From Podarcis erhardii (taxonomy: Eukaryota), in NCBI GenBank assembly GCA_964252035.1, contig OZ176201.1: 64,000 nt of DNA; one strand, written 5' to 3'. The translations under genes were made by a program, and so were the position numbers. The notes under the pieces are model-generated. The model ran no database searches. It saw only the letters and a program-made list of their open reading frames with translations, and was not told the origin of the DNA. Below, piece by piece: positions 33,401-58,783 of this stretch; within the stretch, counting starts at the first letter, position 1; each line of letters opens with the position of its first letter.

Positions 33401-36400
33401 AGGAGGTGAGCTGGGGCTTGGCAAGCGCAGGATGACGGGCCACGCCAGTGCAGGCTGCACAGTCCCCTTTCACCTGCTGTTCTCTGGTTGCAGGTTTCAC
33501 CGGTGGGTTCGTGGGGACCCCAGCGGACATGGTGAATGTCAGGTCAGTGGTCTCCTTCCCCATTCCCTATGGCTGTGCTTCAACCTTGCCCAGTTCAGCT
33601 CCCCCTGACCTGTTCACTTGACTCTTCACACTCCTACTGAACTCGGGGACATTCCATGGGGATAAGCCCACACAAGGACTTCCACCAGTTCAGTGGTGTT
33701 TTCCCTCTTCGTGCCCCCTTAAATTGGCTCGGGTGGGCAGGGGGGTTTGGAGAGTCCCTGCAGCTGCATGCGGGTGGAGGAGAGGGCTGATCATTTCACC
33801 ATCAGAAATGCTTCTGCTGACAGAGAAATCTGCTTAGTACCAGCTGGATAGCTCAGTGGGTTAGAGCATGGTGCTGAAAATGCCAAGGCTGCAGGTTTGA
33901 TCCCAGCTGCATATTCCTGTATTGCAGGGGGCTGGATTAGATGATCCGTGGGGTTCCTTCCAACTCGATAATGATGATGATGTACTATTTATACCCCACC
34001 CATCTGGCTGGGTTCACCAAGCCACTCTGGGTGGCTCCCAACAGACTATTAAAAACACCAAACATTAAAAACTTCCCTTCAGATGTCTTCTAAAAGTCAG
34101 ATAGTTGTTTATTTCCTTGACATCTGATGGGAGGGCGTTCCACAGGGCGGGCGCCACTACTGAGAAGGCCCTCTGCCTGGTTCCCTGTAACCTCACTTCT
34201 CGCAGGGAGGGAACTGCCAAAAGGCCCTCGGAGCTGGACCTCAGTGTCCGGGCAGAATGATGGGGGTGGAGATGCTCCTTCAGGTATACGATCACAAAAT
34301 TCCGACCAGCTACACAGAATTTAGCCCATTGCCTCTGCAATTCGCCTTGCTCTGGGGCAAACTCAGCATCCTATTGGGGGGATGATTTGGGAAAGACTTT
34401 TGTTTCCCCATGAAAGTGTCCTTAACGCTGTGATGCTCTTCCCTCCACAGGATGCAGAATGACATGAAGCAGCCGGTGCATCTGCGGCGCAAGTGAGTGT
34501 CCAGATTGCAGAGGGGGGTTGTACAGGAGATGTACAAGTGCGGGAGAGGCAGATAATAGCATTAAGGAGGGGGACCCTGTGAAAGCCTTTATCCCTCCGA
34601 AAAGGATTGTACTGAAGCTGCATGGCCACAGAGGGGCAGCATGGATCCTCAAATTCCAGTTGTTTGAAGCTCAAAGACATCTTTCTGAATCAGGACAGCA
34701 CCCCCTGGCGACCAAAGCCCAGGGTTCTATAAGTCCCTACTAGATCTGGAAGAGTCCATAGTTGCAGCCTTCTGTCTGGTATGGCCAGTGGAAGTAGCAG
34801 CTGCAGCAAGATGGGTTTAGGTGTCTAATATGGTCTCTCTTTGCTTTCTAGCTACTCGCATGCTCTGGATGGCTTGTATCGGGTTCTTCGTGAAGGTAAG
34901 GATTTGGTCAGCGCGCAGTGTGGCTAGTTTGAGCTTCTGAGAGGCCACAGGGAGCTCACCCTGAATGAAAGAAATTGGCCTTGGGGAGAATCTGCTGCAG
35001 CCTCTGCCCCCTTTTCTATACGGAAGTGGGAGCTGTTAGGTTACAGGCCAGTCCCGGTGCCAGGAAGCTGGCAAAACCAGTGCCAGGAGAAGGGGCAATA
35101 CCATCCAAGGCAAACTGCCTGGAAGTAAAGCTGGTGGCAGGATGAGAGCCTGCGAAAGTTGCAGGTACAGCCTTTGTTTAGTGGCTCTTTGGGATCAGTG
35201 ATAGGAGCCCCTTGCAAGCTCCTTTTGAGTCTGGCAGCCGCTGAACGTTTGGAAGGGAGAGGGGTGAGTAAGCTGGTGGGAAGTGCAGGGGAAAATGGTG
35301 ACCTGGAGTTCACATGGGTAGAATTCAGAGTTGACCACATACTTGGCTTCTAGAGCGTCACAGAGAACAAGCATATGGGGCCCAGGGAAAAGGGAAAGAG
35401 GAGACTAAAAGGGTTGTTCCTTCATGTGTGTTAGAGAGAGAGGGGCGGTGGGGGGAGAGGGAGATTGGCAAGTGGAGAAAATAAGACCTACCCCTCTTGC
35501 CTTTAAAGTCCAGTGGAAGGATGAGGAATGGTAGCTTCCTGCTCCATGTTGCTCTGGAAATTGAGGACATGCAGCCTTCACTGGTTCAGATCCACTGTGG
35601 CTTGCCCCCAGGCAAGTGCGCATAGATTGGCAGCTGGACTGGGTTTCAAAAAGTGAAACTGTCCAAGAGCAGAGAGACCCAGTCTGAGCAACTGCCCCTG
35701 TCCTCTGTCCCTGATTAGTTTCAGCAGTGTTCTCTCTTCCACAGGCATCTAATAGGAGACCTTATCTTCTCTGATGCTTTGATTTCTAACCACAGATTTA
35801 TATTTTAATCTTCCAACCACAGATATTTTATTGTGATGGGGCCTCAGTATCTCTGCCCTATCAGGGCTTCTGATCGTCTGGCTTTGGCTAAATGAGGAGC
35901 TATTTCATAACCTTTTAAAACCAACCTGTGCTAGAATACAGTGAAGTCTTTTATGGATTGGCTCTGCTTTCTAAGCACCTAGTAGATTATAACATCATTC
36001 CTGTATCTTTGGGAGCAATAGAGAATATCCATTCCTGTGCAGTGTCTTAGTGGCTGGGAGGCTGTGGTTTCTGAAGAGTTGACGAGCAGAAAAGCACTGC
36101 TGTTTGTAGACTGTGCAACCTGGTAAGCTCTACCCTGTATACCCCCATGCTTTGAATCCCTTTTGTCTTTGCAGAGGGTGTGAAGAAATTGTTCTCGGGA
36201 GCTTCAATGGCAGCAAGTCGAGGGGCCCTGGTTACTGTTGGACAGGTAGTGATACAAAAAAGAACCATAGTTGCTGATGGATGTGTACCTAAATCCAGAC
36301 CACATGTGTGCATATTCAGCTAGGCATATACCCACCGCAATGCACACCAAGGCCATATCTATATGCCCACCTTTCACCCCAGGCATGAAATCGATTGACA

Positions 36401-39400
36401 TGTTCTCTATCCACCTGGGGAGGGAAAATAGAATTTAGTAGAAATCCTGTCCTGTTACAGTCAGATGTAATGGAAGAGACACCTGCTCTGCAGTTGATGT
36501 GGGGAAAGATTTCTAGTCCGGGCATAACCTCCCCACAAGAGCCAGTCTTCCCATTGGGAGGCTATAGGCAGCTGCATTCAGACAGCAGGATGCAGAAGGT
36601 GACATGTATTTGCAAAATCTGCAGACAGCACTAATAGCTTTTGACTCAAAATGTTAAAATGTTTGAAAGCTTCTTTTAGTCTTTGGGCCCAAGGTTAACA
36701 GGCTAGTTTGTAGGTTCCTTCGTACTGTCTCTCCTGTCTCTGGGGCTGCAAGGGGCTGGGGTTGGGGGGAGAGGAGAGGAGAGGAGAGATCAGGCTCTGT
36801 GGGTGAACATCTAGCAATTGTTTTCTCAAGGTGGGAGATTTCTGCGAAAAGGTTCCACTGGTGTAAAAGCACAAGTGACCCAGTGTAGGCTGGAGAATGA
36901 GATCTTATATTTCCCAGTCCACCTGTGTCCTCAGCATAATGGCTTAGGACTCTTAAAGATGGGTTAGGCCAGGGGTGGTGTCCAGATACTGTTGGACTCT
37001 CATCACCTCCAACCAGCAAACATAATAACAAGGGATGGTAGTCTAGAGAGCCCCAAGTTCCCCCGGATTAGGCCTACAACTTATCTCCCTGGCGGTACTG
37101 ATGGGACAGGAGATTTATCCGAGAGGGCTGAGGATTAGTCACACTTTTGCCACTTGTCCTCCTGATACACTGCAGAGGCTGGTGTCACTGTCTTGCCTGA
37201 TCCCTTGTGGTTCAACGGAGAATGGACACTCCGTTTCAGGGCCAGTCTGTCTGCTTGCTCATGAGTGCTGGGAGATTTGGGGCCAGTCTCACAACTTTCT
37301 GCTTCTCTGCAGCTCTCCTGCTATGACCAGGCTAAGCAGTTGGTTCTTGGGACCGGTTTCCTCTCCGACAATATTCTCACCCATTTCTTGGCCAGCTTTA
37401 TTGCTGTAAGTGGATACCTGGGTGTGGGTGCAAAGTCAAGGATTTTATTTTGTTTGTGTGTGTGTATTCATTGGGGTTAAAGCCATGATGCTTGTTCCAC
37501 CTTCTGGGGGAGATGGAGGTCCAAAGTCGAAGTCCATGGAGTTACCAAGAATGGATTGTTACAAAGGTCCAAGTCCTTCCCTGCAAAGACAGCATTTCAA
37601 ACCCAGAAAGCTCATCATTTAAAGTTGGATTGTCTGGCAATCCATAGCTGGGCAGTAAACCAGACCTGCACAAGTGGTAATGCTCCAAGATAAACACAAT
37701 GTTTGGCCTTCCTGAGATTGTAAAAATATGGGGGAGGGTGGTGGATGATGGTGGTGAAGTATCTACCATACTTGACTGGGGCTTGGTGGGGACCATACAC
37801 TGTTTAAGCCTGTACTAGGCTCACGACTCCTTTGTAGCTCCTTTGTAAAGCTATTACATTACTGAGCATCTGCTTGGACCCAGTAGTTATTCTACTGGGT
37901 GCTGTTTGGAATTAATAAGACCATAAGCAAGGTTTGACAAAGGGAAAAACGGAAAAGGGAAGGTAGGGCTAATAACAGGTACTGCAGTGTAGAAGAGGCT
38001 GTTGTGATTCTGAAACGGTTTTGCCCAAGAAGTTGGTTTTATAGAAGGCTTTGAAAGGTTGGTGAGAAAGAGAATTAGCCGGATAGAGGGATGGGGTTCT
38101 TTAAGGTCTGGGGCACTGTGAAAGAGGCGCTTCAGGGAACTAACTATATATTCCAGTGCAGATCATGCAAGATGATTTTGTGGCCTCTTCCCATTTATTC
38201 TGCTCCATGGCATAAAAACACAGCACGCGCCACACACTAATTTAAGGTAACTGTTTGGTAAACCAGTGGTCTGCAAGTAGAGAGAGAAATGCCTTGCCCC
38301 TCCCCTGTTTCATCACTGGATTTCTACTTTTAACACAGCGGTGGAGTGAGATATTGCCCTTTCCTCCAACTACCATGGCTAAGGGAGCTGGGCATGTTTA
38401 GCCTGGAGAAGAGGAGGTTAAGGGGTGATATGATAGCCATGTTCAAATATATAAAAGGATGTCACATAGAGGAGGGAGAAAGGTTGTTTTCTGCTGCTCC
38501 AGAGAAGTGGACACGGAGCAATGGTTCCAAACTACAAGAAAAAAGATTCCATCTAAACATTAGGAAGAACTTCCTGACAGTAAGAGCTGTTTGACAGTCG
38601 AATTTGCTGCCAAGGAGTGTGGTGGAGTCTCCTTCTTTGGAGGTCTTTAAGCAGAGGCTTGACAACCATATGTCAGGAGTGCTCTGATGGTGTTTCCTGC
38701 TTGGCAGGGGGTTGGACTTGATGGCCCTTGTGGTCTCTTCCAACTCTATGATTCTATGATTCTATGATTCTACTACTTAGCAGTATGTCAGTTAATAACT
38801 AGCTTATCATGTGGGCATGCTTCTGGTGACATTCGCGCCATGCCCTGTAACCCAGGATTTCAAAAAGGCTCTGCTGCCATCACACCCTCCCTTTTCATTG
38901 CAGGGAGGATGTGCCACATTCCTGTGTCAGCCCTTGGATGTGCTGAAGACACGCCTTATGAACTCCCAGGGGGAGTATCGGGTGAGTGATCTGATCCCTG
39001 TCAATGGCTGTCCCGATTTCCAGTCTCTTGATTCATTGGTTGCTTGAACTAAGCATCATCCTATAGATATCACTGGCCTTCTGGCCAGCTTTCTGTTTTT
39101 TCTTTTGCTGCTGCTTGATGCCATGCCTCTGAGCATCATTCTGGCTGCTGCAGCTCTTCAGCAGTTTGTGACTGGCAGAGATTGAGCCTTGTAAGGAGAG
39201 GAATGGGATCTGTACTGGGCATGGGCATGGGCTGACTTCTTTCTCATTCTCTCTCAGGGTGTCGTGCACTGTGCAGTGGAGACGGCCAAGCTTGGGCCAC
39301 TGGCTTTCTATAAGGTAATGCGGATGCAGCAGGAGCGTTGATGGGTGATTGCACCAAGTAGACCAGGCACGCAATGCAGACAGCACAACTCCTAGCCCTT

Positions 39401-39854: not shown

Positions 39855-41701
39855 GGGAGAAGAGGGTCTGCCTTAGTTAGAGGCATAAACCTGGAGGACC
39901 GGGGGCGGGGAGGGCTTGGACACTACGACCCCCCACAGTGCCCGGGTATCACACACTATTCCTTTGCCAAGGTGCGGCATTCTTAACAGTGCCCCTTTTA
40001 GCCCTGCGGCACCAGCTGAACTCTCGCCGAATGCCCACTTTCAGTGCCTGACAGTCTCTCACAGCTGCTAGCCAACCCTATGGCATTGCTTGGTGCCTGA
40101 TGGTATGACAGCCAGCCAATCAGAACTCTCTCCTTTAGTGCCCAGTAGCAGTGAGCAGCCAACCTCTTCCCACAATGCCTTTCTCCTATGCCCAGCAGTT
40201 CACTGGAGCCTCCATTCCTTGCCGTTAGCAGCAGCACCACAATACTGTCTGCCGTGCAGTAGTAACCCTGCTGACCCCACAGCATCTCCTCTTAACGCCC
40301 CACAGCCCCACGAATGCCCTCGTCTTGTCCATCGGCATTGCAACCACTTGCTACAGGAGCCCTGAAAGACTGGAGTTGCTTCTGCGCTGTGCCATGGGCA
40401 GTAACTTGCTTCTTCCGCAATACCACCATCTTTCTCTGTCCTCCCAGTCTCCTTTGTTGTTTCTTGGGGGGGGGGGGGGAGTTGGGTGCCACGGCCTCCC
40501 AGCTCCCAGTCACCTGGCCATGCTGAGCACTGCTTTCTCCCCTGTTCTTCTGGAGCAGAAGTGCGTCTCCATGTGGGGAGGTAGAAACTTAATAATAATA
40601 ATAATGTTCTCTGTCCATTTTTAAATGTTTACGAGTGAGCTGGAGAGAAGTTCTGTTAGTTAATGATGGGGCTGCCGATAGCAATACACCTGGCGGGCAC
40701 CTTTTCCTTCTTACCCTTCAGCGTCCCAGATTTTTAAATGTTTCTACGAACACAAGGTCCGGCCTCCTCCCTTTTTCCTACCTCAGTCTCCTCTTACCCC
40801 TCAGGTCTACTGTGTGAGGCAGGGATGGCCCCTTGTATTTAACTGTGACTGGTAGTAGTGGTAGCGTAGGGCAAGCAACACCACAGTCTATGGCCAGCCT
40901 AGGAAGCCTTGCCTCCTTCATTTTGCTTCTCGCTTTAACCTTGTTCAGCCAAAGCCTCCTGAAACCAAAGGGCCTCCTGGAGGAGGGACACTAATGAGAG
41001 CAGAGAATAGGTTTCTGAGGTATTCCTCTAACTAGCAAGAGTCAGGTTACTCAGCCTGGGGGAGAGAACGTTTGAATCCCTTGTGACACCTCCTTCGCTT
41101 CTCATGTACCCCAAGTGAGCAGGCCTCTTGGCATATGATAGTGGAAGGGTGGTGGGGCTGTCGTTAAGTCGGCAAGGCCTTCACTGAGGATCTGGGACGG
41201 GGAGAACATGGTCCGTATTTTGACCCATGGCATGGGCTAAGGTTGCAGGGCAGGGGGAGGCCCTCTGTTTACTAGGTTTACTCTAGAGTAGGTGTCACAG
41301 ATAGACATTGTGTGCCTCTTAAGCTGCCAAACTTTCCCTACTCCCTGCCTGATTTATCCTCTGGCAGTTCCTCTGAGCCTCTTGGCAGTTTTGGAGGGAG
41401 CCTAGACGGCTGTGAAATCTTTCCACGTTGCCTTGCTTTTTCTGTGATGTTGTCAAGGCCCCGTTCTGTAGCACTGATTTTTTTTTTTTAAATGCCTCTG
41501 GATCTGGCCCACGCCTAATGAAGTGATTGTCGTATCGGCCGTTTGTCCCTTGTTTCTGCTGGCCTTTGTTTTGCCAGCATGTGGTGCCCCCCTCACTGGT
41601 CAGCCCCCCCCCCCCCGGGTGTGAAGCGTCATTCCAGAGGATAATGACTCTGCAGGGTCGAAGAGCCAGAGCAACTAAATCAGCACTTTTGTAATCATGA
41701 C

Positions 41702-41707
41702 AATAAA
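41702..41707 (+). terminator. Probable SLC25A10 polyadenylation signal AATAAA
   Basis: First canonical AATAAA seen after the stop codon (about 1.85 kb 3'UTR), followed by T/GT-rich sequence. Confidence 0.55.
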
Positions 41708-42288
41708 GTAATTTTGAAAAGCAGGTGTTGCTCGTTCCTGAAGCACCAGTCCCTTTCAACTTGTGTCATATGACTTCGGATTTACATCCTCCAAGTTCGC
41801 TCTGTTGGGAAAATGACTGAGAAGGCTAAACGGTTTTGTACAGTGCTGTTATTTAAAATGTCCCTCAAATGTGGCGTATTGAACCATTTTTAGTTAACAG
41901 TTTCCACAGAGAGAGAGAGACGTATTCTCATTTTCAACAGGTGCCAACCTAGCATGGTTGAGTAAGCAGGGCTAGTCCTTGTTGCAGCAAGTTGCTTCTC
42001 TTGCCAGACTTTAAGGAATTTGATGTCCAAATTGTGCAGATCCACTTTCTCCTATGCAGAATCTTGCTGTGGTACAAAGTGCAGCAGGAAGCTACAGGAC
42101 TTAAGATTGAGTCCCTTCATTGTATGAGGCAAATGGTATAAACCCACGTAGGGGGGTGGACCAGTGTTAGAGCCTCCGCCTTACATACAGAAGGTCCCAG
42201 GTTCAGTCCCTGGAATCAGCAGGATTTTAGTGGGCAGCCCTGTTCTGTCTCAAACAGAGCATGAGGAAGCGGTGTCTCAAACACAGGT

Positions 42289-42451
42289 ATAGATTGGTAG
42301 CCGTGTTGGTATCTGAAGAAGTGTGCATGCACACGAAAGCTCATACCTAGAACTAGGTATCTGAAGAAGTGTGCATGCACACGAAAGCTCATACCTAGAA
42401 CTAACTTAGTTGGTCTTTAAGGTGCTACTGGAAGGAATTTTTTTATTTTGT
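42289..42451. mobile_element. Short Penelope-like element insertion (forward stub plus inverted fragment) with 12-bp flanking direct repeat
   Basis: GGTAGCCGTGTTGG stub, then hammerhead units and ACTTAGTTGGTCTTTAAGGTGCTACTGGAAGGAATTT. Flanked by TCAAACACAGGT at 42277-42288 and 42452-42463. Family assignment is from recall of squamate Penelope ends and the hammerhead. Confidence 0.7.
42308..42403 (+). ncRNA. Tandem pair of minimal hammerhead ribozyme motifs (Penelope-derived), able to form a double hammerhead
   Basis: Two identical 48-nt units. Each reads GGTAT (helix I) - CTGAAGA (core CUGANGA) - A - GTGTG/CATG/CACAC (helix II) - GAAA - GC - TC (cleavage after C) - ATACC (helix I). AGCT is palindromic. 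Confidence 0.75.
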
Positions 42452-42775
42452 TCAAACACAGGTGTTGTCCCTATGCTATGGCTGCCAACATTTATCTACC
42501 CCATACTGTGTGGCTTGCATGAGAGGTGCGTCTGGACAAGGCGCTAATTGGGCAGTAGAAGAAGGCCAAGGGAATGCACATTCGTCATCTTAACAAAGCT
42601 TAATTAGGTCTGGCAATAACAGCGCTTTGTTCCCAACCCTGCTCTTTGTGCCACATTCCAATATCTCCAGGTAAGAACAACCTATGGACCTCTTAAGTGG
42701 CTGAGGCACCTAGCGACAAAAAGACTGGAAGTTGTAATGCTGTGGTAGGCGACAGGTGGTTCTGTGCCATATATT

Positions 42776-43082
42776 GCGTGGGTGGCACTGTGGTCTAAGC
42801 CACTGAGCCTCTTGAACTTGCCAGCCTAGCAGTTTGAAAGCACACCAGTGCAAGTAGATAAATAGGTACTGCTGTGGCAGGAAGGTAAACAACATTTCTG
42901 TGTGCCCTGGCTTCTGTCATGGTGTTCAGTTGTGCCAGAAGCGGTTTAGTCATGCTGGCCGCATGACCCAAAAAGCTTTCTGTGGACAAATACTGGCTCC
43001 CTCATCCTGAAGCAAGATGCGCATCACAGCCCATAGTCTCCTTTGACTGGACTTAACCATTCAGAGGTCCTTTACCTTTACT
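42776..43082 (+). mobile_element. Sauria SINE (internally deleted)
   Basis: GGGTGGCACTGTGGTCTAAGCCACTGAGCC head, CAACCTAGCAGTTCGAAAGC-like body, (ACCTTT)n tail. Confidence 0.85.
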
Positions 43083-44910
43083 TTTTTACTGCAACTCTCC
43101 CATCCTTGACCATTTGTCATGCAGGCTGTGGCAGCTGGGATTTGGGAGTCTATAACAACATCTACAGAGCCACAGGTTCTTCACCCCTGGGGATCTGACT
43201 TGCACCCCTTTTAAGATACATTAGATCCCTATGTCTTAGTGTGATTCTGGGGGCCAGCAGCTGTTGGTTGGCACTTATCCTCTGTTCCTTTCCCCTATTT
43301 ATTTAGCCTCTCCAAGTAGGATGCAGATTGGATACTGAAAGCTGCGCTGTTCTGCACAGCACAGAGAGCTTACTGCCCGCAGAGGCAAGTGTGCTGCTCT
43401 TCCTTTCTCCCCAGCTTGATGCATTCAGTCCTAGGTTGCTGCATGATGCATAAAGCACTGGAGCTGTGGAGATGGCTCCAGGCACTGTCGGCACTCAGCA
43501 GATGGAGCTTGGGTGCCGACTGTGCTCTCGGTAGCCCCAATTAGTGATGGAGAGGAGATAAGCATATGTGACTCCTGTCTCCTCTCTCACCCCTTCCAGC
43601 GCGTTGCCAGAATAACCTGGGTCTGGCTGACCTGTGCTGTAGCAGGACAGAGGGAGGTATCACACATTGCATTTGTTTAGAAGCATGTCCTGACGGTGCT
43701 TTCAATGCATGCCAAAAAATGTAGGTCTAGCAAATGCCTGTTTGGCTATGCTTGTCAGGGAGCTAGGATTGAACATAATACAACTGCCTTGTTGGTCGCC
43801 AGCCAGACAATTTTGGGATGTCTACAGGTGGGGCATGAGCACAATACCCCTGTCTTGCTGCTGTTCTCCAGCTGCTGGTTTTTAGAAGCGTGCTGCCTCT
43901 TGTCCTGGAAATAGTATTTGTCCACCATGGCAGGTAATTGTTTGATTTGCTGCTGTGTGTGTAAAATTGACTACAGAACACTAAAGAAGATGTGGTCAGT
44001 CAGTCTTTTATATGAATATATGCAACATCGTTCAGAGATGCCAAGAACCTAAGCCACATGGTGTGGTCCAGCAACTGCACCCCTGTCAATTCACAAAATA
44101 CATGCCAGGGTAGCTGGATGTTTCCTACAAAGGACGCTGGTTTTTCCTAGGATAGAGCAAGGACTGCACAATATCCTGGCTTAGCAGGTGGGGTCAGGCC
44201 AGCAGGAAGCTGGCAAATGCCTCTAACTTCTTGCCATTCAAAACAACTGCCAAATGAGTGTGGAGAGTGCTACAAAACACTGAACAGAACTGCACAATCC
44301 CTGATCTGAGTAGTGTCTTGGCTTTACACATTATTTCTCCTATTTGTGTGTCTCTCTGGCAAACCTAGGCACTGGGATCAGGTATTCAGCTTCTAGTATT
44401 CGTTAGGCTTGACTTAATGGTCATAGTGGTGTAACTTTGCTTAGCCATGGAAAAAACAGCACAAATGACAAATGTCAGCCGGGGCAGTGGCAAGGTGTGT
44501 GTAATTTAGTTCAAGCAACATGTATTTCAAACTCAGCCCCTGTTCTGAGTTGGTGCTTACTCCACAACTAAAAGGGTAGCCAGACTTGCTTTCACCACTG
44601 CTACTGCTTCCACTTGACTAGAGTAGTTTGGTTTAGGTAGCATAAGGAGCCCTGAGTAGTATAAGCAAGGGTACCTGGCAGGGGGGCCAACATGAATAAA
44701 ATATTGGGGGGGGGGAGCTGGTAAGCCCTGCCCCCCATAATCACATGATGGCAATGCCCACCACCTTTTGGAGGGCCTAGCTCCCTCAAAATTTTTTTTG
44801 GGGGGAGGAACCTAATAGTACCTGGGACTGAAGTTGTTCAGCACTGGTGCTTATGAACCCTCATTGACGCAGGATCAAGCTGTGAAGTTTTCCCTGCAGA
44901 GGCTGTAGCA

Positions 44911-54494: not shown

Positions 54495-54536
54495 ATTCAT
54501 TCATTCATGCTTGCTTGCTTGCTTGCTTGCTTGCTT
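54495..54536. repeat. Compound (TTCA)n(TTGC)n microsatellite
   Basis: Seen directly in the sequence. Confidence 0.85.
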
Positions 54537-54563
54537 TCTATAAAGCACACACCTAGCAATGAT

Positions 54564-54657
54564 TCTAGTTACAGGTAGGTAGCCGTGTTGGTCTGCCAAT
54601 AACAAACTTAGTTGGTCTCTAAGGTGCTACTGGAAGGAATTTTAAAATTTTGTTTCG
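54564..54657. mobile_element. Second short Penelope-like insertion of the same family, without the hammerhead part, 13-bp flanking direct repeat
   Basis: GGTAGCCGTGTTGGTCTGCCA followed by ACTTAGTTGGTCTCTAAGGTGCTACTGGAAGGAATTT, shared with the 42.3 kb copy. ACCTAGCAATGAT at 54551-54563 and 54658-54670. Confidence 0.7.
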
Positions 54658-55678: not shown

Positions 55679-55817
55679 CAGGGGTTTTCCAAACTTGAGT
55701 CTCCAACTGTTTCTGGACTACAATTCCCACCCTCCCTAACCCCGGTCCTGCTAGCTAGGGATGATGGAAGTTGTAGTCCAAAAACAGATGGAAAGACCCA
55801 AGTTTGGGAAACAACGG
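55679..55817. mobile_element. hAT MITE of the GACTACAA family
   Basis: Imperfect TIRs CAGGGGTTTTCCAAACTT / AAGTTTGGGAAACAACGG; internal palindrome GGACTACAATTCCCA / TGGAAGTTGTAGTCC. Confidence 0.7.
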
Positions 55818-55939
55818 CATTCATTAGTGAGAGAGGAAGGCCTTGAGCTTGATGACCGCCTGGCCAGCCGAGGGCGAGGGCCCTTTGCCCCCTTTCCCTG
55901 ATGCCACTCGCGTGTTTCAAAGAGTACACGCGTCCCAGG

Positions 55940-56700
55940 AACAGGATGGCACCCCCTGACGCGAGGCCCTAAGAAGAATGAGGCGGCCTGAGCCTCGGCT
56001 CCGAAGTTGGGGTGGGCGGGGTGGGCGGGTGGAGAGGAAGGAGGAGGTGGTCTGCGCAGCCCTCCCTGACACCTCCAAGTCTCGCTTTCCTTTTGCGCGT
56101 CAGCAGCAGCAACGGCGGGTGAAAACTTGCGACTCCGGCAGGAGAGAAGGTCCCTTTCTGGAGAGCTGCTTCCCTGGCGCGGGGAGAACGCGGCGCCCCT
56201 CCGGCTGCCCGCCCGCCCGCCCGCCCGCCTGCCCGCACCTGCTGCTCCGCGAAGAGGCTCGGCCGCTGTCTCCTCCTTCTCTCCCTCCGGGCGCCCACCC
56301 CCCCCCCAGCTCGCCGGTCCCTCCCCCCGAAGCCGGCCACTGAGGCTGCATTGAGCCGCGGCTCTGGCAAAAGTTTTGAGCGGAGCGCCAGCGCTCAGGA
56401 GCCGGCGCAGAGCGACCCCTTGGCGGGGAACTTCCTCGACCCTTTGCCCGGCTGCGATGCGCCCGACGGGGAGCGCCGAGAACTGAAGCCACACAGGCAG
56501 GTAGGTCTGGGCCGGCGGCTGAGGGAAGAAGGAGGGCTGCCGTCTTCGCGGGTTTTTCCTTTTCCTTTGGTCACGTCGAGGGGCGCGGGCGCGTGGCGGG
56601 GAGATCCCTCAGCCGGTTCCAGGGGCACCGGAGGCGCTTTCTCTGGGCTCGGTGTGGAAGGGGGCTCTCCCCCCCCTTTTTCTCCCCGTCAGCCTCGGGC
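55940..56700. promoter_or_regulatory. CpG island / promoter of a downstream gene (GCGR expected by synteny)
   Basis: CpG- and GC-rich. Multiple GC boxes (GGGCGG, (CCCG)n at 56208-56229). Followed by a strong donor site at 56500/56501. Confidence 0.7.
56350..56500 (+). other. Probable non-coding first exon (5' boundary approximate); GCGR by synteny only
   Basis: Ends in CAG|GTAGGT inside the CpG island. No recognisable coding exon follows within the window. In human, GCGR follows SLC25A10 on the same strand and has a non-coding exon 1 (recalled). Confidence 0.45.
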
Positions 56701-58598: not shown

Positions 58599-58783
58599 GA
58601 CTGGGATAGCTCAGTTGGTTAGAGCAGGAGACTCTTATGCTCTGGGTGGTGGGTTCGACCCACATGTTGGGCAAAAAGATACCTGCATGGAAATTCTGTT
58701 TCTTCCTTAGAATCATAGAGTTCGAAGGGACCACAAGGGTTATCTAGTCCATGACCCTTTTGGTCCCTTTGAACTCTGATTCT
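58599..58783 (+). mobile_element. tRNA-derived SINE (Squam3-like) rearranged by an inverted duplication of its tail
   Basis: A-box TAGCTCAGTTGG (58607-58618), B-box-like GGTTCGACCC (58652-58661); the tail is present in both orientations. Confidence 0.8.

What the first reader, a model, noticed from the sequence alone, without database searches (positions are those of the whole stretch)
42308..42403. Tandem Penelope-derived hammerheads forming a potentially active double-hammerhead ribozyme just downstream of SLC25A10
Seen: two identical 48-nt units, each with every catalytic core element (CUGAAGA at 42313-42319, helix II GUGUG/CACAC, GAAA, UC cleavage doublet, helix I GGUAU/AUACC). A single unit has only a 1-bp helix III, but AGCU is palindromic, so unit 1 and unit 2 can pair into a shared 4-bp helix III. 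The junction ATACCTA-GAAC-TAGGTAT closes a 7-bp hairpin that serves as helix I for one half, and GGTAT(42308)/ATACC(42391-42395) serves the other. Predicted cuts are after C42342 and C42390 (CUC triplets). Established: Penelope-like elements carry minimal hammerheads that cleave as dimers, as do viroid and newt-satellite double hammerheads. Inference: this local duplication builds the dimer in cis on the + strand, about 600 nt past the SLC25A10 AATAAA (41702). It could cut nascent read-through RNA, influence termination, or destroy long-3'UTR isoforms. Activity and function are untested; the CUC triplet and the extra A after the core may slow cleavage.
Basis: partly seen in the sequence, partly recalled or inferred. 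Interest (0 to 1): 0.8.

Follow-up and report, generated by a model that had tools for sequence, protein, structure and literature searches.

The report
Tandem hammerheads in young Penelope-type insertion
The two identical 48-base hammerhead-ribozyme motifs are real, but they sit inside a recent 163-base insertion of an extremely abundant lizard Penelope-type retroelement that a sister species lacks at this spot, and nothing found here suggests the pair works as a ribozyme for the neighbouring gene.

Summary
Positions 42308-42403 are two 100% identical 48-nt units, and each meets every descriptor feature of the minimal Penelope-like-element (PLE) hammerhead. The "extra A" is a hallmark of that family.

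- The tandem lies in a 163-bp insertion (42289-42451) flanked by a 12-nt target-site duplication.
- A single-copy contig from a relative about 2% diverged runs from 42276 straight to 42452. That is an empty site, so the insertion is young and lineage-specific.
- Summed contig depth over the element is 10^4-10^5 times that of the unique flanks, so this is a very high-copy repeat.
- The cis double-hammerhead pairing can be drawn, at -21.3 kcal/mol. Two rival folds beat it: a rod in which the two palindromic helix II segments pair with each other (-40.8) and two separate monomer folds (-28.4). The predicted population of the shared helix III is about 0.
- RNA contigs from a relative end at 41720, just past the AATAAA, with zero depth for the next ~370 nt.
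- Published PLE mini-hammerhead dimers cleave poorly or not at all in vitro.

This scan has already logged 280 hammerhead notes in this genome, including 49-nt-period arrays elsewhere (unchecked). Verdict: a new copy of a known kind, with no evidence of host function. Logan contigs could not independently confirm the duplication.

The parts
42277..42288 (.). Left target-site duplication TCAAACACAGGT
   Evidence: 12/12 direct repeat with 42452-42463. The contig of organism E joins 42276 directly to 42452.
42289..42451 (+). 163-bp insertion of a Penelope-type retroelement fragment: head, two hammerhead units, then tail
   Evidence: Bounded by the TSD and by the empty site in a relative. Summed contig depth is 0.35-3.2 million against 18-63 in the flanks.
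42296..42310 (+). Head motif GGTAGCCGTGTTGGT, shared with copy B. Inferred to be an inverted copy of the distal (extended) tail. It joins the first unit at a GGT microhomology.
   Evidence: Exact match at 54578-54592. Copy B's head continues as TTGGTCTGCCA, which is the reverse complement of the loose-end consensus that follows 42452 in organism E.
42308..42355 (+). Hammerhead unit 1, a minimal type-I hammerhead. Predicted cut after C42342.
42356..42403 (+). Hammerhead unit 2, identical to unit 1. Predicted cut after C42390. On its own it has an 8-bp helix I (CTAGGTAT/ATACCTAG).
42404..42451 (+). Proximal tail of the element, conserved in copy B. This is where reverse transcription would have started.
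   Evidence: 39-nt match at 97% to 54605-54643. This part is about 4x deeper than the 5' part, as 5' truncation predicts.
42452..42463 (.). Right target-site duplication TCAAACACAGGT
54564..54657 (+). Second copy of the family (copy B), 94 bp. It has the same head and tail but no hammerhead, and is flanked by the 13-nt TSD ACCTAGCAATGAT (54551-63 and 54658-70).
41702..41707 (+). AATAAA of the upstream mitochondrial-carrier gene (SLC25A10-like). The RNA contig of a relative ends at 41720.

Best explanation
Positions 42289-42451 are a young, lineage-specific insertion of a short fragment of a hyper-abundant lizard Penelope-like retroelement (PLE), or of a non-autonomous derivative of its terminal repeat. 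The insertion landed in a tRNA-derived SINE, about 600 nt beyond the poly(A) signal of an SLC25A10-like gene. It consists of three parts: a ~15-nt inverted piece of the element's distal tail, two identical 48-nt minimal type-I hammerhead modules, and the proximal tail. A 12-nt target-site duplication flanks it.

The hammerhead belongs to the life cycle of the retroelement. Its presence here is a by-product of retrotransposition, not a device of the host gene.

The doubling of the module most likely arose during reverse transcription, by a template jump at the 5' end of the module. The left edge of the duplicated segment coincides, within the GGT microhomology, with the head/body junction. This step is inference. 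Post-insertion slippage is the alternative.

As RNA, the tandem is predicted to collapse into a rod in which the two palindromic helix II segments pair with each other, or into two inactive monomer folds. The cis double hammerhead would therefore be at most a transient, poorly populated state.

Shown: the repeat, the motif features, the TSD, the empty site, the high copy number and the fold energies. Inferred: mobilisation by PLE machinery, the template-jump origin, and the lack of cleavage.
For: - The tandem is exact.
- All minimal-hammerhead features are present, with none found in shuffles.
- A 12-nt TSD flanks the insertion.
- X11 record 10 is a single-copy contig (depth 63, 718 nt) that runs 41908-42276 and then 42452-807, an empty site. 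The X4 contig also stops matching at 42276.
- Depth over the element is 0.35-3.2 million against 18-63 in the flanks in three species, with a 3'-to-5' gradient.
- A second copy in the window has its own 13-nt TSD and the same head and tail.
- The head of copy B is the reverse complement of the extended-tail consensus read from relatives. This fits a PLE that primes on both DNA strands from two RT start sites 30-40 nt apart (PMC11167929).
- Fold energies are -21.3 (double hammerhead), -28.4 (two monomers) and -40.8 (rod) kcal/mol, with P(helix III) = 0.
- RNA of a relative ends at 41720 and depth is 0 for the next ~370 nt.
- The literature on the known kind is PMC4209133 and bioRxiv 10.64898/2026.07.22.740005.
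- The scan's own notes hold 280 hammerhead notes in this genome, including TSD-flanked fold-backs and 49-nt arrays (unchecked leads).
Against: - No PLE reverse-transcriptase or GIY-YIG ORF is adjacent, and no family consensus could be fetched (searches were blank). Assignment to a PLE therefore rests on the hammerhead type, the tail and inverted-head architecture, and the literature.
- The nearest-neighbour model ignores hammerhead tertiary structure and co-transcriptional folding. The estimated barrier from the double hammerhead to the rod is ~13.7 kcal/mol, so a kinetically trapped active form cannot be excluded.
- No RNA data exist for the window's own species. The RNA run is from a relative 3-5% diverged that apparently lacks the insertion.
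- Contigs show presence, not absence.
- Reads could not verify the duplication itself.
Confidence: 0.85

Rival explanations
1. The local duplication builds an active double hammerhead in cis that cleaves SLC25A10 read-through or long-3'UTR RNA and so influences termination or isoform stability.
For: The pairing scheme is complete and nested, with a 4-bp AGCU/AGCU helix III, a 7-bp inner helix I and a 5-bp outer helix I. The site is on the sense strand, 606 nt past the AATAAA. Salamander and some Xenopus dimers do cleave (PMC7229834; 1 of 9). The barrier to the rod is about 13.7 kcal/mol, so a co-transcriptional window is conceivable.
Against: The double hammerhead is 19.5 kcal/mol above the rod and 7 kcal/mol above the two-monomer fold, with a predicted population of 0. 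The insertion is absent at the orthologous site of a close relative. It is one of a vast number of copies. RNA contigs of a relative give depth 0 from 41756 to 42091. PLE mini-hammerhead dimers have low in vitro activity (PMC4209133), and 8 of 9 Xenopus dimers showed none. No Rfam hammerhead model matches even at E<=10.
Confidence: 0.04
2. Micro-retrozyme. The 48-nt module is itself a replicating unit. Cleavage at both C17 sites would release a 48-nt RNA that is circularised, or used end-to-end, and re-copied. That would give 48-49-nt-period arrays, of which this dimer is one.
For: By the Li et al. operational criteria, this locus would be called an 'active' non-LTR retrozyme dimer: a TRF tandem, two consecutive complete hammerheads, and a unit MFE of -11.3, below the -5 cut-off. 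Their shortest family consensus is 51 bp. Other first-stage notes report 49-nt-period arrays of up to six units elsewhere in this genome (unchecked). The duplicated segment has sharp edges with no microhomology at the unit/unit junction, as in end-to-end template jumping.
Against: The second unit runs straight into the ordinary tail, and the whole insertion carries one TSD, so a normal tail-primed insertion explains it. The unit edges (GGTAT...AACTA) do not coincide with the predicted cleavage site. No 48-nt RNA species has been seen. 48 nt is far below the 170-400 nt circles described (PMC7229834). Cleavage competence is doubtful.
Confidence: 0.06
3. The second unit is an assembly artefact or a rare somatic or allelic variant, and the real locus carries a single, monomeric and therefore inactive hammerhead.
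For: Logan contigs of the same species do not bridge 42217-42428, so there is no independent support for two copies at this locus.
Against: An exact, in-register 48-nt doubling inside a 163-bp insertion is easily spanned by long reads and by 150-nt reads. Such collapse or expansion errors are uncommon at two copies. Similar tandems are noted elsewhere in the genome (unchecked).
Confidence: 0.05

Closest known systems
Minimal hammerhead ribozymes (min-HHR) of Penelope-like element terminal repeats (Cervera & De la Pena 2014, PMC4209133)
   Same: Type-I topology; CUGANGA and GAAA core; an unpaired base between positions 9 and 10.1; a G10.1-C11.1 pair; a short (5 bp) helix I; a long helix II; a 1-bp helix III with palindromic 15.2-16.2 (AGCU), which implies action as a dimer; massive genomic copy number; and mostly solitary, truncated copies.
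   Different: No PLE ORF is adjacent. Here two modules lie head-to-tail only 48 nt apart, rather than one in each pLTR about 3 kb apart. Helix II plus its loop is a perfect 14-nt palindrome, which favours an inactive inter-unit duplex.
Non-LTR retrozymes of animals, which are tandem type-I hammerhead repeats derived from PLE pLTRs (PMC7229834; bioRxiv 10.64898/2026.07.22.740005)
   Same: A tandem repeat with a complete hammerhead in each of two consecutive units, a TSD, an intergenic site near a 3' end, and PLE ancestry. It would pass the published operational filter for an 'active' dimer.
   Different: The 48-nt period is below the reported ranges (150-450 nt, and 51-972 bp). The unit holds nothing but the ribozyme and an 8-nt spacer. 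The dimer is embedded in an ordinary tail-primed insertion. No unit-length linear or circular RNA is known.
Poseidon PLE of Anolis carolinensis (PAc; PMC11167929)
   Same: A squamate PLE with a hammerhead close to the 3' 'tail'. Reverse transcription starts at two internal sites 30-40 nt apart and on both DNA strands. This would explain why both copies in the window carry an inverted distal-tail fragment at their 5' end and stop at the proximal tail site.
   Different: The sequence family differs: in PAc the ORF starts at stem II and the cut is 26 nt after the ATG, which does not hold here. The PAc hammerhead cleaved only with its protein, and no in vivo reads ended at its cut site.
Double hammerheads of avocado sunblotch viroid and newt satellite 2 (Forster et al. 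1988, as cited in PMC4209133)
   Same: An unstable helix III in the monomer is extended by pairing of two units in a multimeric transcript. A stable rod competes with the active fold.
   Different: Those RNAs are replicating or abundantly transcribed multimers with shown cleavage. Here there is one DNA copy in an apparently silent intergenic spot, cleavage is untested, and the fold is predicted to be unpopulated.

Membership tests
PLE minimal hammerhead (min-HHR) | Catalytic core C3-U4-G5-A6-N7-G8-A9 and G12-A13-A14 | tested here: met
   CTGAAGA at 42313-19 and 42361-67; GAA at 42335-37 and 42383-85
PLE minimal hammerhead (min-HHR) | [quoted passage not shown] | tested here: met
   A42320, then G42321 paired with C42334. 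The feature is listed in PMC4209133.
PLE minimal hammerhead (min-HHR) | A15.1-U16.1 pair with palindromic 15.2-16.2, and a cleavable H17 | tested here: met
   AGCT at 42338-41 followed by C42342
PLE minimal hammerhead (min-HHR) | Type-I topology with a 4-5 bp helix I and a helix II longer than the canonical 4 bp | tested here: met
   GGTAT/ATACC gives 5 bp. Helix II is 5 bp with a CAUG loop, within a 14-nt palindrome.
PLE minimal hammerhead (min-HHR) | Lies in the terminal repeat (pLTR) of an element encoding RT and a GIY-YIG endonuclease | tested here: inconclusive
   No ORF is adjacent and the copy is a 163-bp fragment. The family consensus could not be fetched. The architecture of tail plus inverted head fits PLE insertion.
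PLE minimal hammerhead (min-HHR) | Compensatory changes in helices I and II across family members | not testable with these tools
   Only two identical units are at hand, and the other copy in the window lacks the motif.
PLE minimal hammerhead (min-HHR) | Mg2+-dependent self-cleavage at C17 | not testable with these tools
   This needs in vitro transcription.
Rfam hammerhead families (Hammerhead_1, _3, _II, HH9, HH10) | Covariance-model score at or above the gathering threshold | tested here: not met
   There is no hammerhead hit at the gathering threshold over the window, nor at E<=10 over 42150-42550. These models expect a real helix III and loop contacts.
Non-LTR retrozyme | Tandem repeat with at least two consecutive units, each with a complete type-I hammerhead and an MFE below -5 kcal/mol (criterion of Li et al.) | tested here: met
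   TRF gives 2.0 copies. The descriptor hits both units. The unit MFE is -11.3. The criterion is quoted.
Non-LTR retrozyme | Monomer of about 150-450 nt (PMC7229834), or 51-972 bp (Li et al.), carrying sequence besides the ribozyme | tested here: not met
   The period is 48 nt, made of a 40-nt ribozyme and an 8-nt spacer.
Non-LTR retrozyme | Unit-length linear and circular RNAs in tissues | not testable with these tools
   No RNA run of the window's species was available. Contigs cannot show 48-nt circles.
Double hammerhead (viroid or newt type) | Two units pair into an extended helix III that is adopted by the multimeric RNA | tested here: inconclusive
   The pairing is possible (-21.3 kcal/mol) but is predicted to be unpopulated against the rod (-40.8) and the two monomers (-28.4). 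Tertiary and kinetic effects are not modelled.

The most novel reading that the evidence does not exclude
The 48-nt module (ribozyme plus an 8-nt spacer) is the smallest retrozyme-like replicating unit yet seen. Cleavage at the two C17 sites, or end-to-end template jumping on a discrete 48-nt RNA, would generate the 48-49-nt-period hammerhead arrays scattered through this lizard genome. This dimer would be a fresh product of that process.
Probability: 0.06. Interest if true: 0.6.

Novelty: new member of a known kind. Interest (0 to 1): 0.17.

Why it matters
This copy matters little for the biology of SLC25A10. It is a recent, species-restricted insertion in an apparently untranscribed spot, and the ribozyme pair is predicted to misfold.

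It has modest value as a clean specimen. It comes with a TSD and an empty site in a sister species, so the structure of a fresh insertion can be read directly: an inverted distal-tail head, a doubled hammerhead module and a proximal tail. That structure is what the both-strand, two-start-site priming reported for the anole Poseidon element would produce, so such copies could be used to study PLE integration and template jumping in vivo.

It also warns that pipelines which score any tandem of two complete hammerheads as an "active retrozyme" will count by-products like this one.

Tried and rejected
- Rfam at the gathering threshold and at E<=10 gave no hammerhead model hit, only weak chance miRNA-like matches caused by the long hairpin.
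- I tried to fetch other family copies from public collections in order to test covariation. Exact-pattern scans of metagenome contigs (two patterns) and viral contigs found nothing. The bacterial genome collection was not tried because it is irrelevant.
- Full-text searches for the head motif and the ribozyme sequence in papers gave 0 hits.
- A look-up of earlier scan findings by sequence was blank, which per the operators means nothing. The look-up near this place was also blank.
- Logan contigs could not bridge the repeat in the window's own species, so neither the duplication nor + strand transcription in that species could be checked.
- I considered that copy B is simply a deletion derivative of a contiguous head-plus-hammerhead consensus. 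I rejected this because its 11 nt after GGTAGCCGTG (TTGGTCTGCCA) exactly match the reverse complement of the extended-tail consensus read from another species.
- I considered the minus-strand ORF 42216-42392 (58 aa). I rejected it as an artefact of the repeat, since the peptide repeats itself and has no family context.

Full report
**1. The observation**

The window carries an exact tandem at 42308-42403 with period 48, 2.0 copies, 100% identity and no indels (TRF; the repeat finder). The base before the array and the base after it both break the repeat, so the duplicated segment is exactly 42308-42355.

Each unit reads, from 5' to 3':
- GGTAT (helix I, 5' strand)
- CTGAAGA (core positions 3-9)
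- one unpaired A
- the 14-nt perfect palindrome GTGTGCATGCACAC (5-bp helix II plus a CAUG loop)
- GAAA
- GC, then TC
- ATACC (helix I, 3' strand)
- the spacer TAGAACTA

I wrote a descriptor that requires the core, an optional bulge, a helix II of at least 4 bp, GAAA, a palindromic 15.x/16.x segment, U-H, and a helix I of at least 4 bp. It finds only these two sites on either strand of the 64 kb and none in 100 shuffles. A simpler pattern gives 2 hits against 0.05 expected. The motif is therefore real and not a chance match.

**2. What surrounds it**

The array sits inside a 163-bp block, 42289-42451. The block is flanked by a perfect 12-nt direct repeat, TCAAACACAGGT, at 42277-88 and 42452-63.

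Logan contigs of four public runs were laid on 41000-43500.
- **Organism E.** It differs at about 2% of positions in the flanks. A single-copy contig (record 10, 718 nt, depth 63) runs 41908-42276 and continues directly at 42452-42807. That is an empty site holding one copy of the 12-mer. The block is therefore an insertion with a target-site duplication, made after these lineages split.
- **Organism B.** Its contig also stops matching at exactly 42276 and runs on for a further 355 nt. The tool did not place that remainder.
- **The window's own species (X1, 0 differences).** Its contigs break at 42216 and resume at 42429, so the doubling at this locus is not independently confirmed.

The host sequence at the insertion point is a tRNA-derived SINE (42140-42276).

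**3. Copy number and family**

Summed contig depth over 42260-42511 is 0.35-3.2 million in the three DNA runs, against 18-63 in unique flanks. The tool warns that this is not a copy number, but it does mark a very high-copy repeat in all three species. The 3' part (42344-42427) is about 4x deeper than the 5' part, as expected for 5'-truncated retrocopies.

The window holds a second copy at 54564-54657. It has its own 13-nt TSD, ACCTAGCAATGAT. It shares the head motif GGTAGCCGTGTTGGT and the tail (39 nt at 97%), but it has no hammerhead.

In organism E, many contigs continue beyond 42452 with TTGACTATGGCAGACCAA (table 7). This shows that the tail has an optional extension. Its reverse complement, TTGGTCTGCCA..., is exactly what follows GGTAGCCGTG in copy B. 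I therefore read the head of both copies as a short inverted copy of the distal tail. In copy A it joins the first hammerhead unit at a GGT microhomology.

This is the structure expected from what was shown in vitro for the Poseidon element of Anolis carolinensis. That element cleaves and extends both DNA strands. Reverse transcription starts at two internal sites whose spacing corresponds to the optional 30-40-bp "tail" (PMC11167929). The link to PLE machinery is inference. No RT or GIY-YIG ORF is adjacent, and I could not fetch further copies.

The scan's own notebook holds 280 notes mentioning hammerheads in this genome. They include TSD-flanked fold-backs and tandem arrays of 49-nt period at other loci. 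These are unchecked first-stage notes, which I used as leads only.

**4. Is it a Penelope-type hammerhead?**

Cervera and De la Pena (PMC4209133) define the PLE mini-hammerhead by:
- the core boxes
- an unpaired base between positions 9 and 10.1
- a conserved G10.1-C11.1 pair
- a short helix I (4-5 bp)
- a long helix II
- a palindromic 15.2-16.2, so that helix III exists only in a dimer

Every one of these is met here.

Rfam's hammerhead models do not match, at gathering or at E<=10. This is unsurprising for a motif without a real helix III, but it is recorded as a failed test for those families.

**5. Would the cis dimer work?**

Its nearest-neighbour energy is -21.3 kcal/mol.

Two other folds are more stable.
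- **The rod (-40.8 kcal/mol).** This is the minimum-free-energy structure. The two 14-nt palindromes pair with each other, and that inter-unit pair has probability 0.998.
- **Two separate monomer folds (-28.4 kcal/mol).** Even when both local helix II hairpins are enforced, this is the best structure. Unit 2 then has an 8-bp helix I, and the probability of the helix III pairs stays at 0.

In stepwise folding, the rod becomes the optimum as soon as the second palindrome is transcribed. The estimated barrier from the double hammerhead to the rod is about 13.7 kcal/mol (findpath). A transient active state is therefore not excluded, and the model ignores tertiary contacts.

Published bench results lower the prior further:
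- Dimeric and trimeric PLE mini-hammerheads cleaved weakly and mostly at non-physiological Mg2+ (PMC4209133).
- 8 of 9 Xenopus retrozyme dimers gave no product (bioRxiv 10.64898/2026.07.22.740005).
- The anole PLE hammerhead cleaved only with its protein, and no in vivo reads ended at its cut site (PMC11167929).

**6. Link to the gene**

Exon-sized ORFs upstream on the + strand carry Mito_carr fragments. I recognise their peptides as SLC25A10-like (own knowledge). AATAAA is at 41702-07.

The only RNA run that could be laid comes from a relative (organism H, 3-5% diverged). Its contigs cover the 3'UTR at depth ~96 and end at 41720. Depth is then 0 from 41756 to 42091. A tiny contig (depth 2.1) begins matching exactly at 42452, so that species probably lacks the insertion too.

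There is thus no sign of appreciable read-through reaching the site. Contigs show presence rather than absence, however, and the window's own species was not sampled. The next GC-rich island lies about 13 kb downstream (55.7-56.7 kb).

**7. Origin of the doubling**

The left edge of the duplicated segment (42308) coincides, within the 3-nt GGT microhomology, with the junction between the inverted head and the body. The unit-to-unit junction has no microhomology.

A random later duplication would hit that edge within +-3 nt in roughly 6% of cases (my estimate: 7 positions out of about 115). I therefore favour a template jump during the same reverse-transcription event. In that scenario the enzyme reached the 5' end of the module twice before joining the top-strand product. 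Post-insertion slippage remains possible. With two identical units, neither can be dated.

**8. Comparison and verdict**

The kind is known. PLE mini-hammerheads are massively dispersed in non-mammalian vertebrates, reptiles included (PMC4209133). Tandem hammerhead repeats derived from PLE terminal repeats are described as non-LTR retrozymes, with family consensus lengths from 51 bp upward and an average of 176 bp in reptiles.

This locus would pass the operational filter for an "active" retrozyme dimer. Its 48-nt unit is nevertheless shorter than any described family, and it is embedded in an ordinary tail-primed insertion.

I file it as a new member of a known kind, with no evidence of host function. 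The most novel reading left open is a 48-nt micro-retrozyme unit that would explain the recurrent 48-49-nt arrays, at about 6%.

Noticed in passing
window 54564-54657 (TSD 54551-63 / 54658-70): A second copy of the family has no ribozyme. Its body starts at (CC)AATAACAA, within a few bases of where the hammerhead would cut (C17 | ATACC-A...). The template may therefore have been a ribozyme-cleaved RNA, joined to the inverted-tail head at a CCA microhomology. This is a single case and is suggestive only.
   Followed up: partly
window 42321-42334 and 42369-42382: Helix II plus its loop is a perfect 14-nt palindrome (GTGTGCATGCACAC) with a self-complementary CAUG loop. It drives the inactive rod fold. 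Organism E shows 'opposite strands' joints at 42311/42381 and several odd back-joints, so the palindrome may be a hot spot for fold-back rearrangements in the family.
   Followed up: partly
window 42764-43100: This is another very high-copy repeat (summed depth 0.4-6 million). I recognise it as a Sauria-type squamate SINE (own knowledge). Contigs of all species break here.
   Followed up: no
window 42140-42276; 33848-33908; 58607-58663: These are tRNA-derived SINE heads. Two of them reach the Rfam tRNA gathering score (35.1 and 30.2 bits) but are most likely SINE promoters, not tRNA genes. The one at 42140-42276 is the target of the insertion.
   Followed up: no
window 38346-38594 (+): An 82-aa ORF in an intron of the carrier gene has the look of a CR1-type LINE 3' end (own knowledge). 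It has no Pfam hit.
   Followed up: no
window 55750-56700: A GC-rich stretch with long overlapping ORFs on both strands is probably the CpG-island promoter of the next gene, about 13 kb downstream of the finding.
   Followed up: no
window 54506-54537: A (GCTT)n microsatellite lies just upstream of copy B.
   Followed up: no
window 42512-42763, run X4 (organism B): Depth is 0 in organism B over 250 nt that are single-copy in organisms A and E. Yet the organism B contig that stops at 42276 has 355 further bases. The cause may be a lineage-specific replacement or a filter effect, and it remains unresolved.
   Followed up: no
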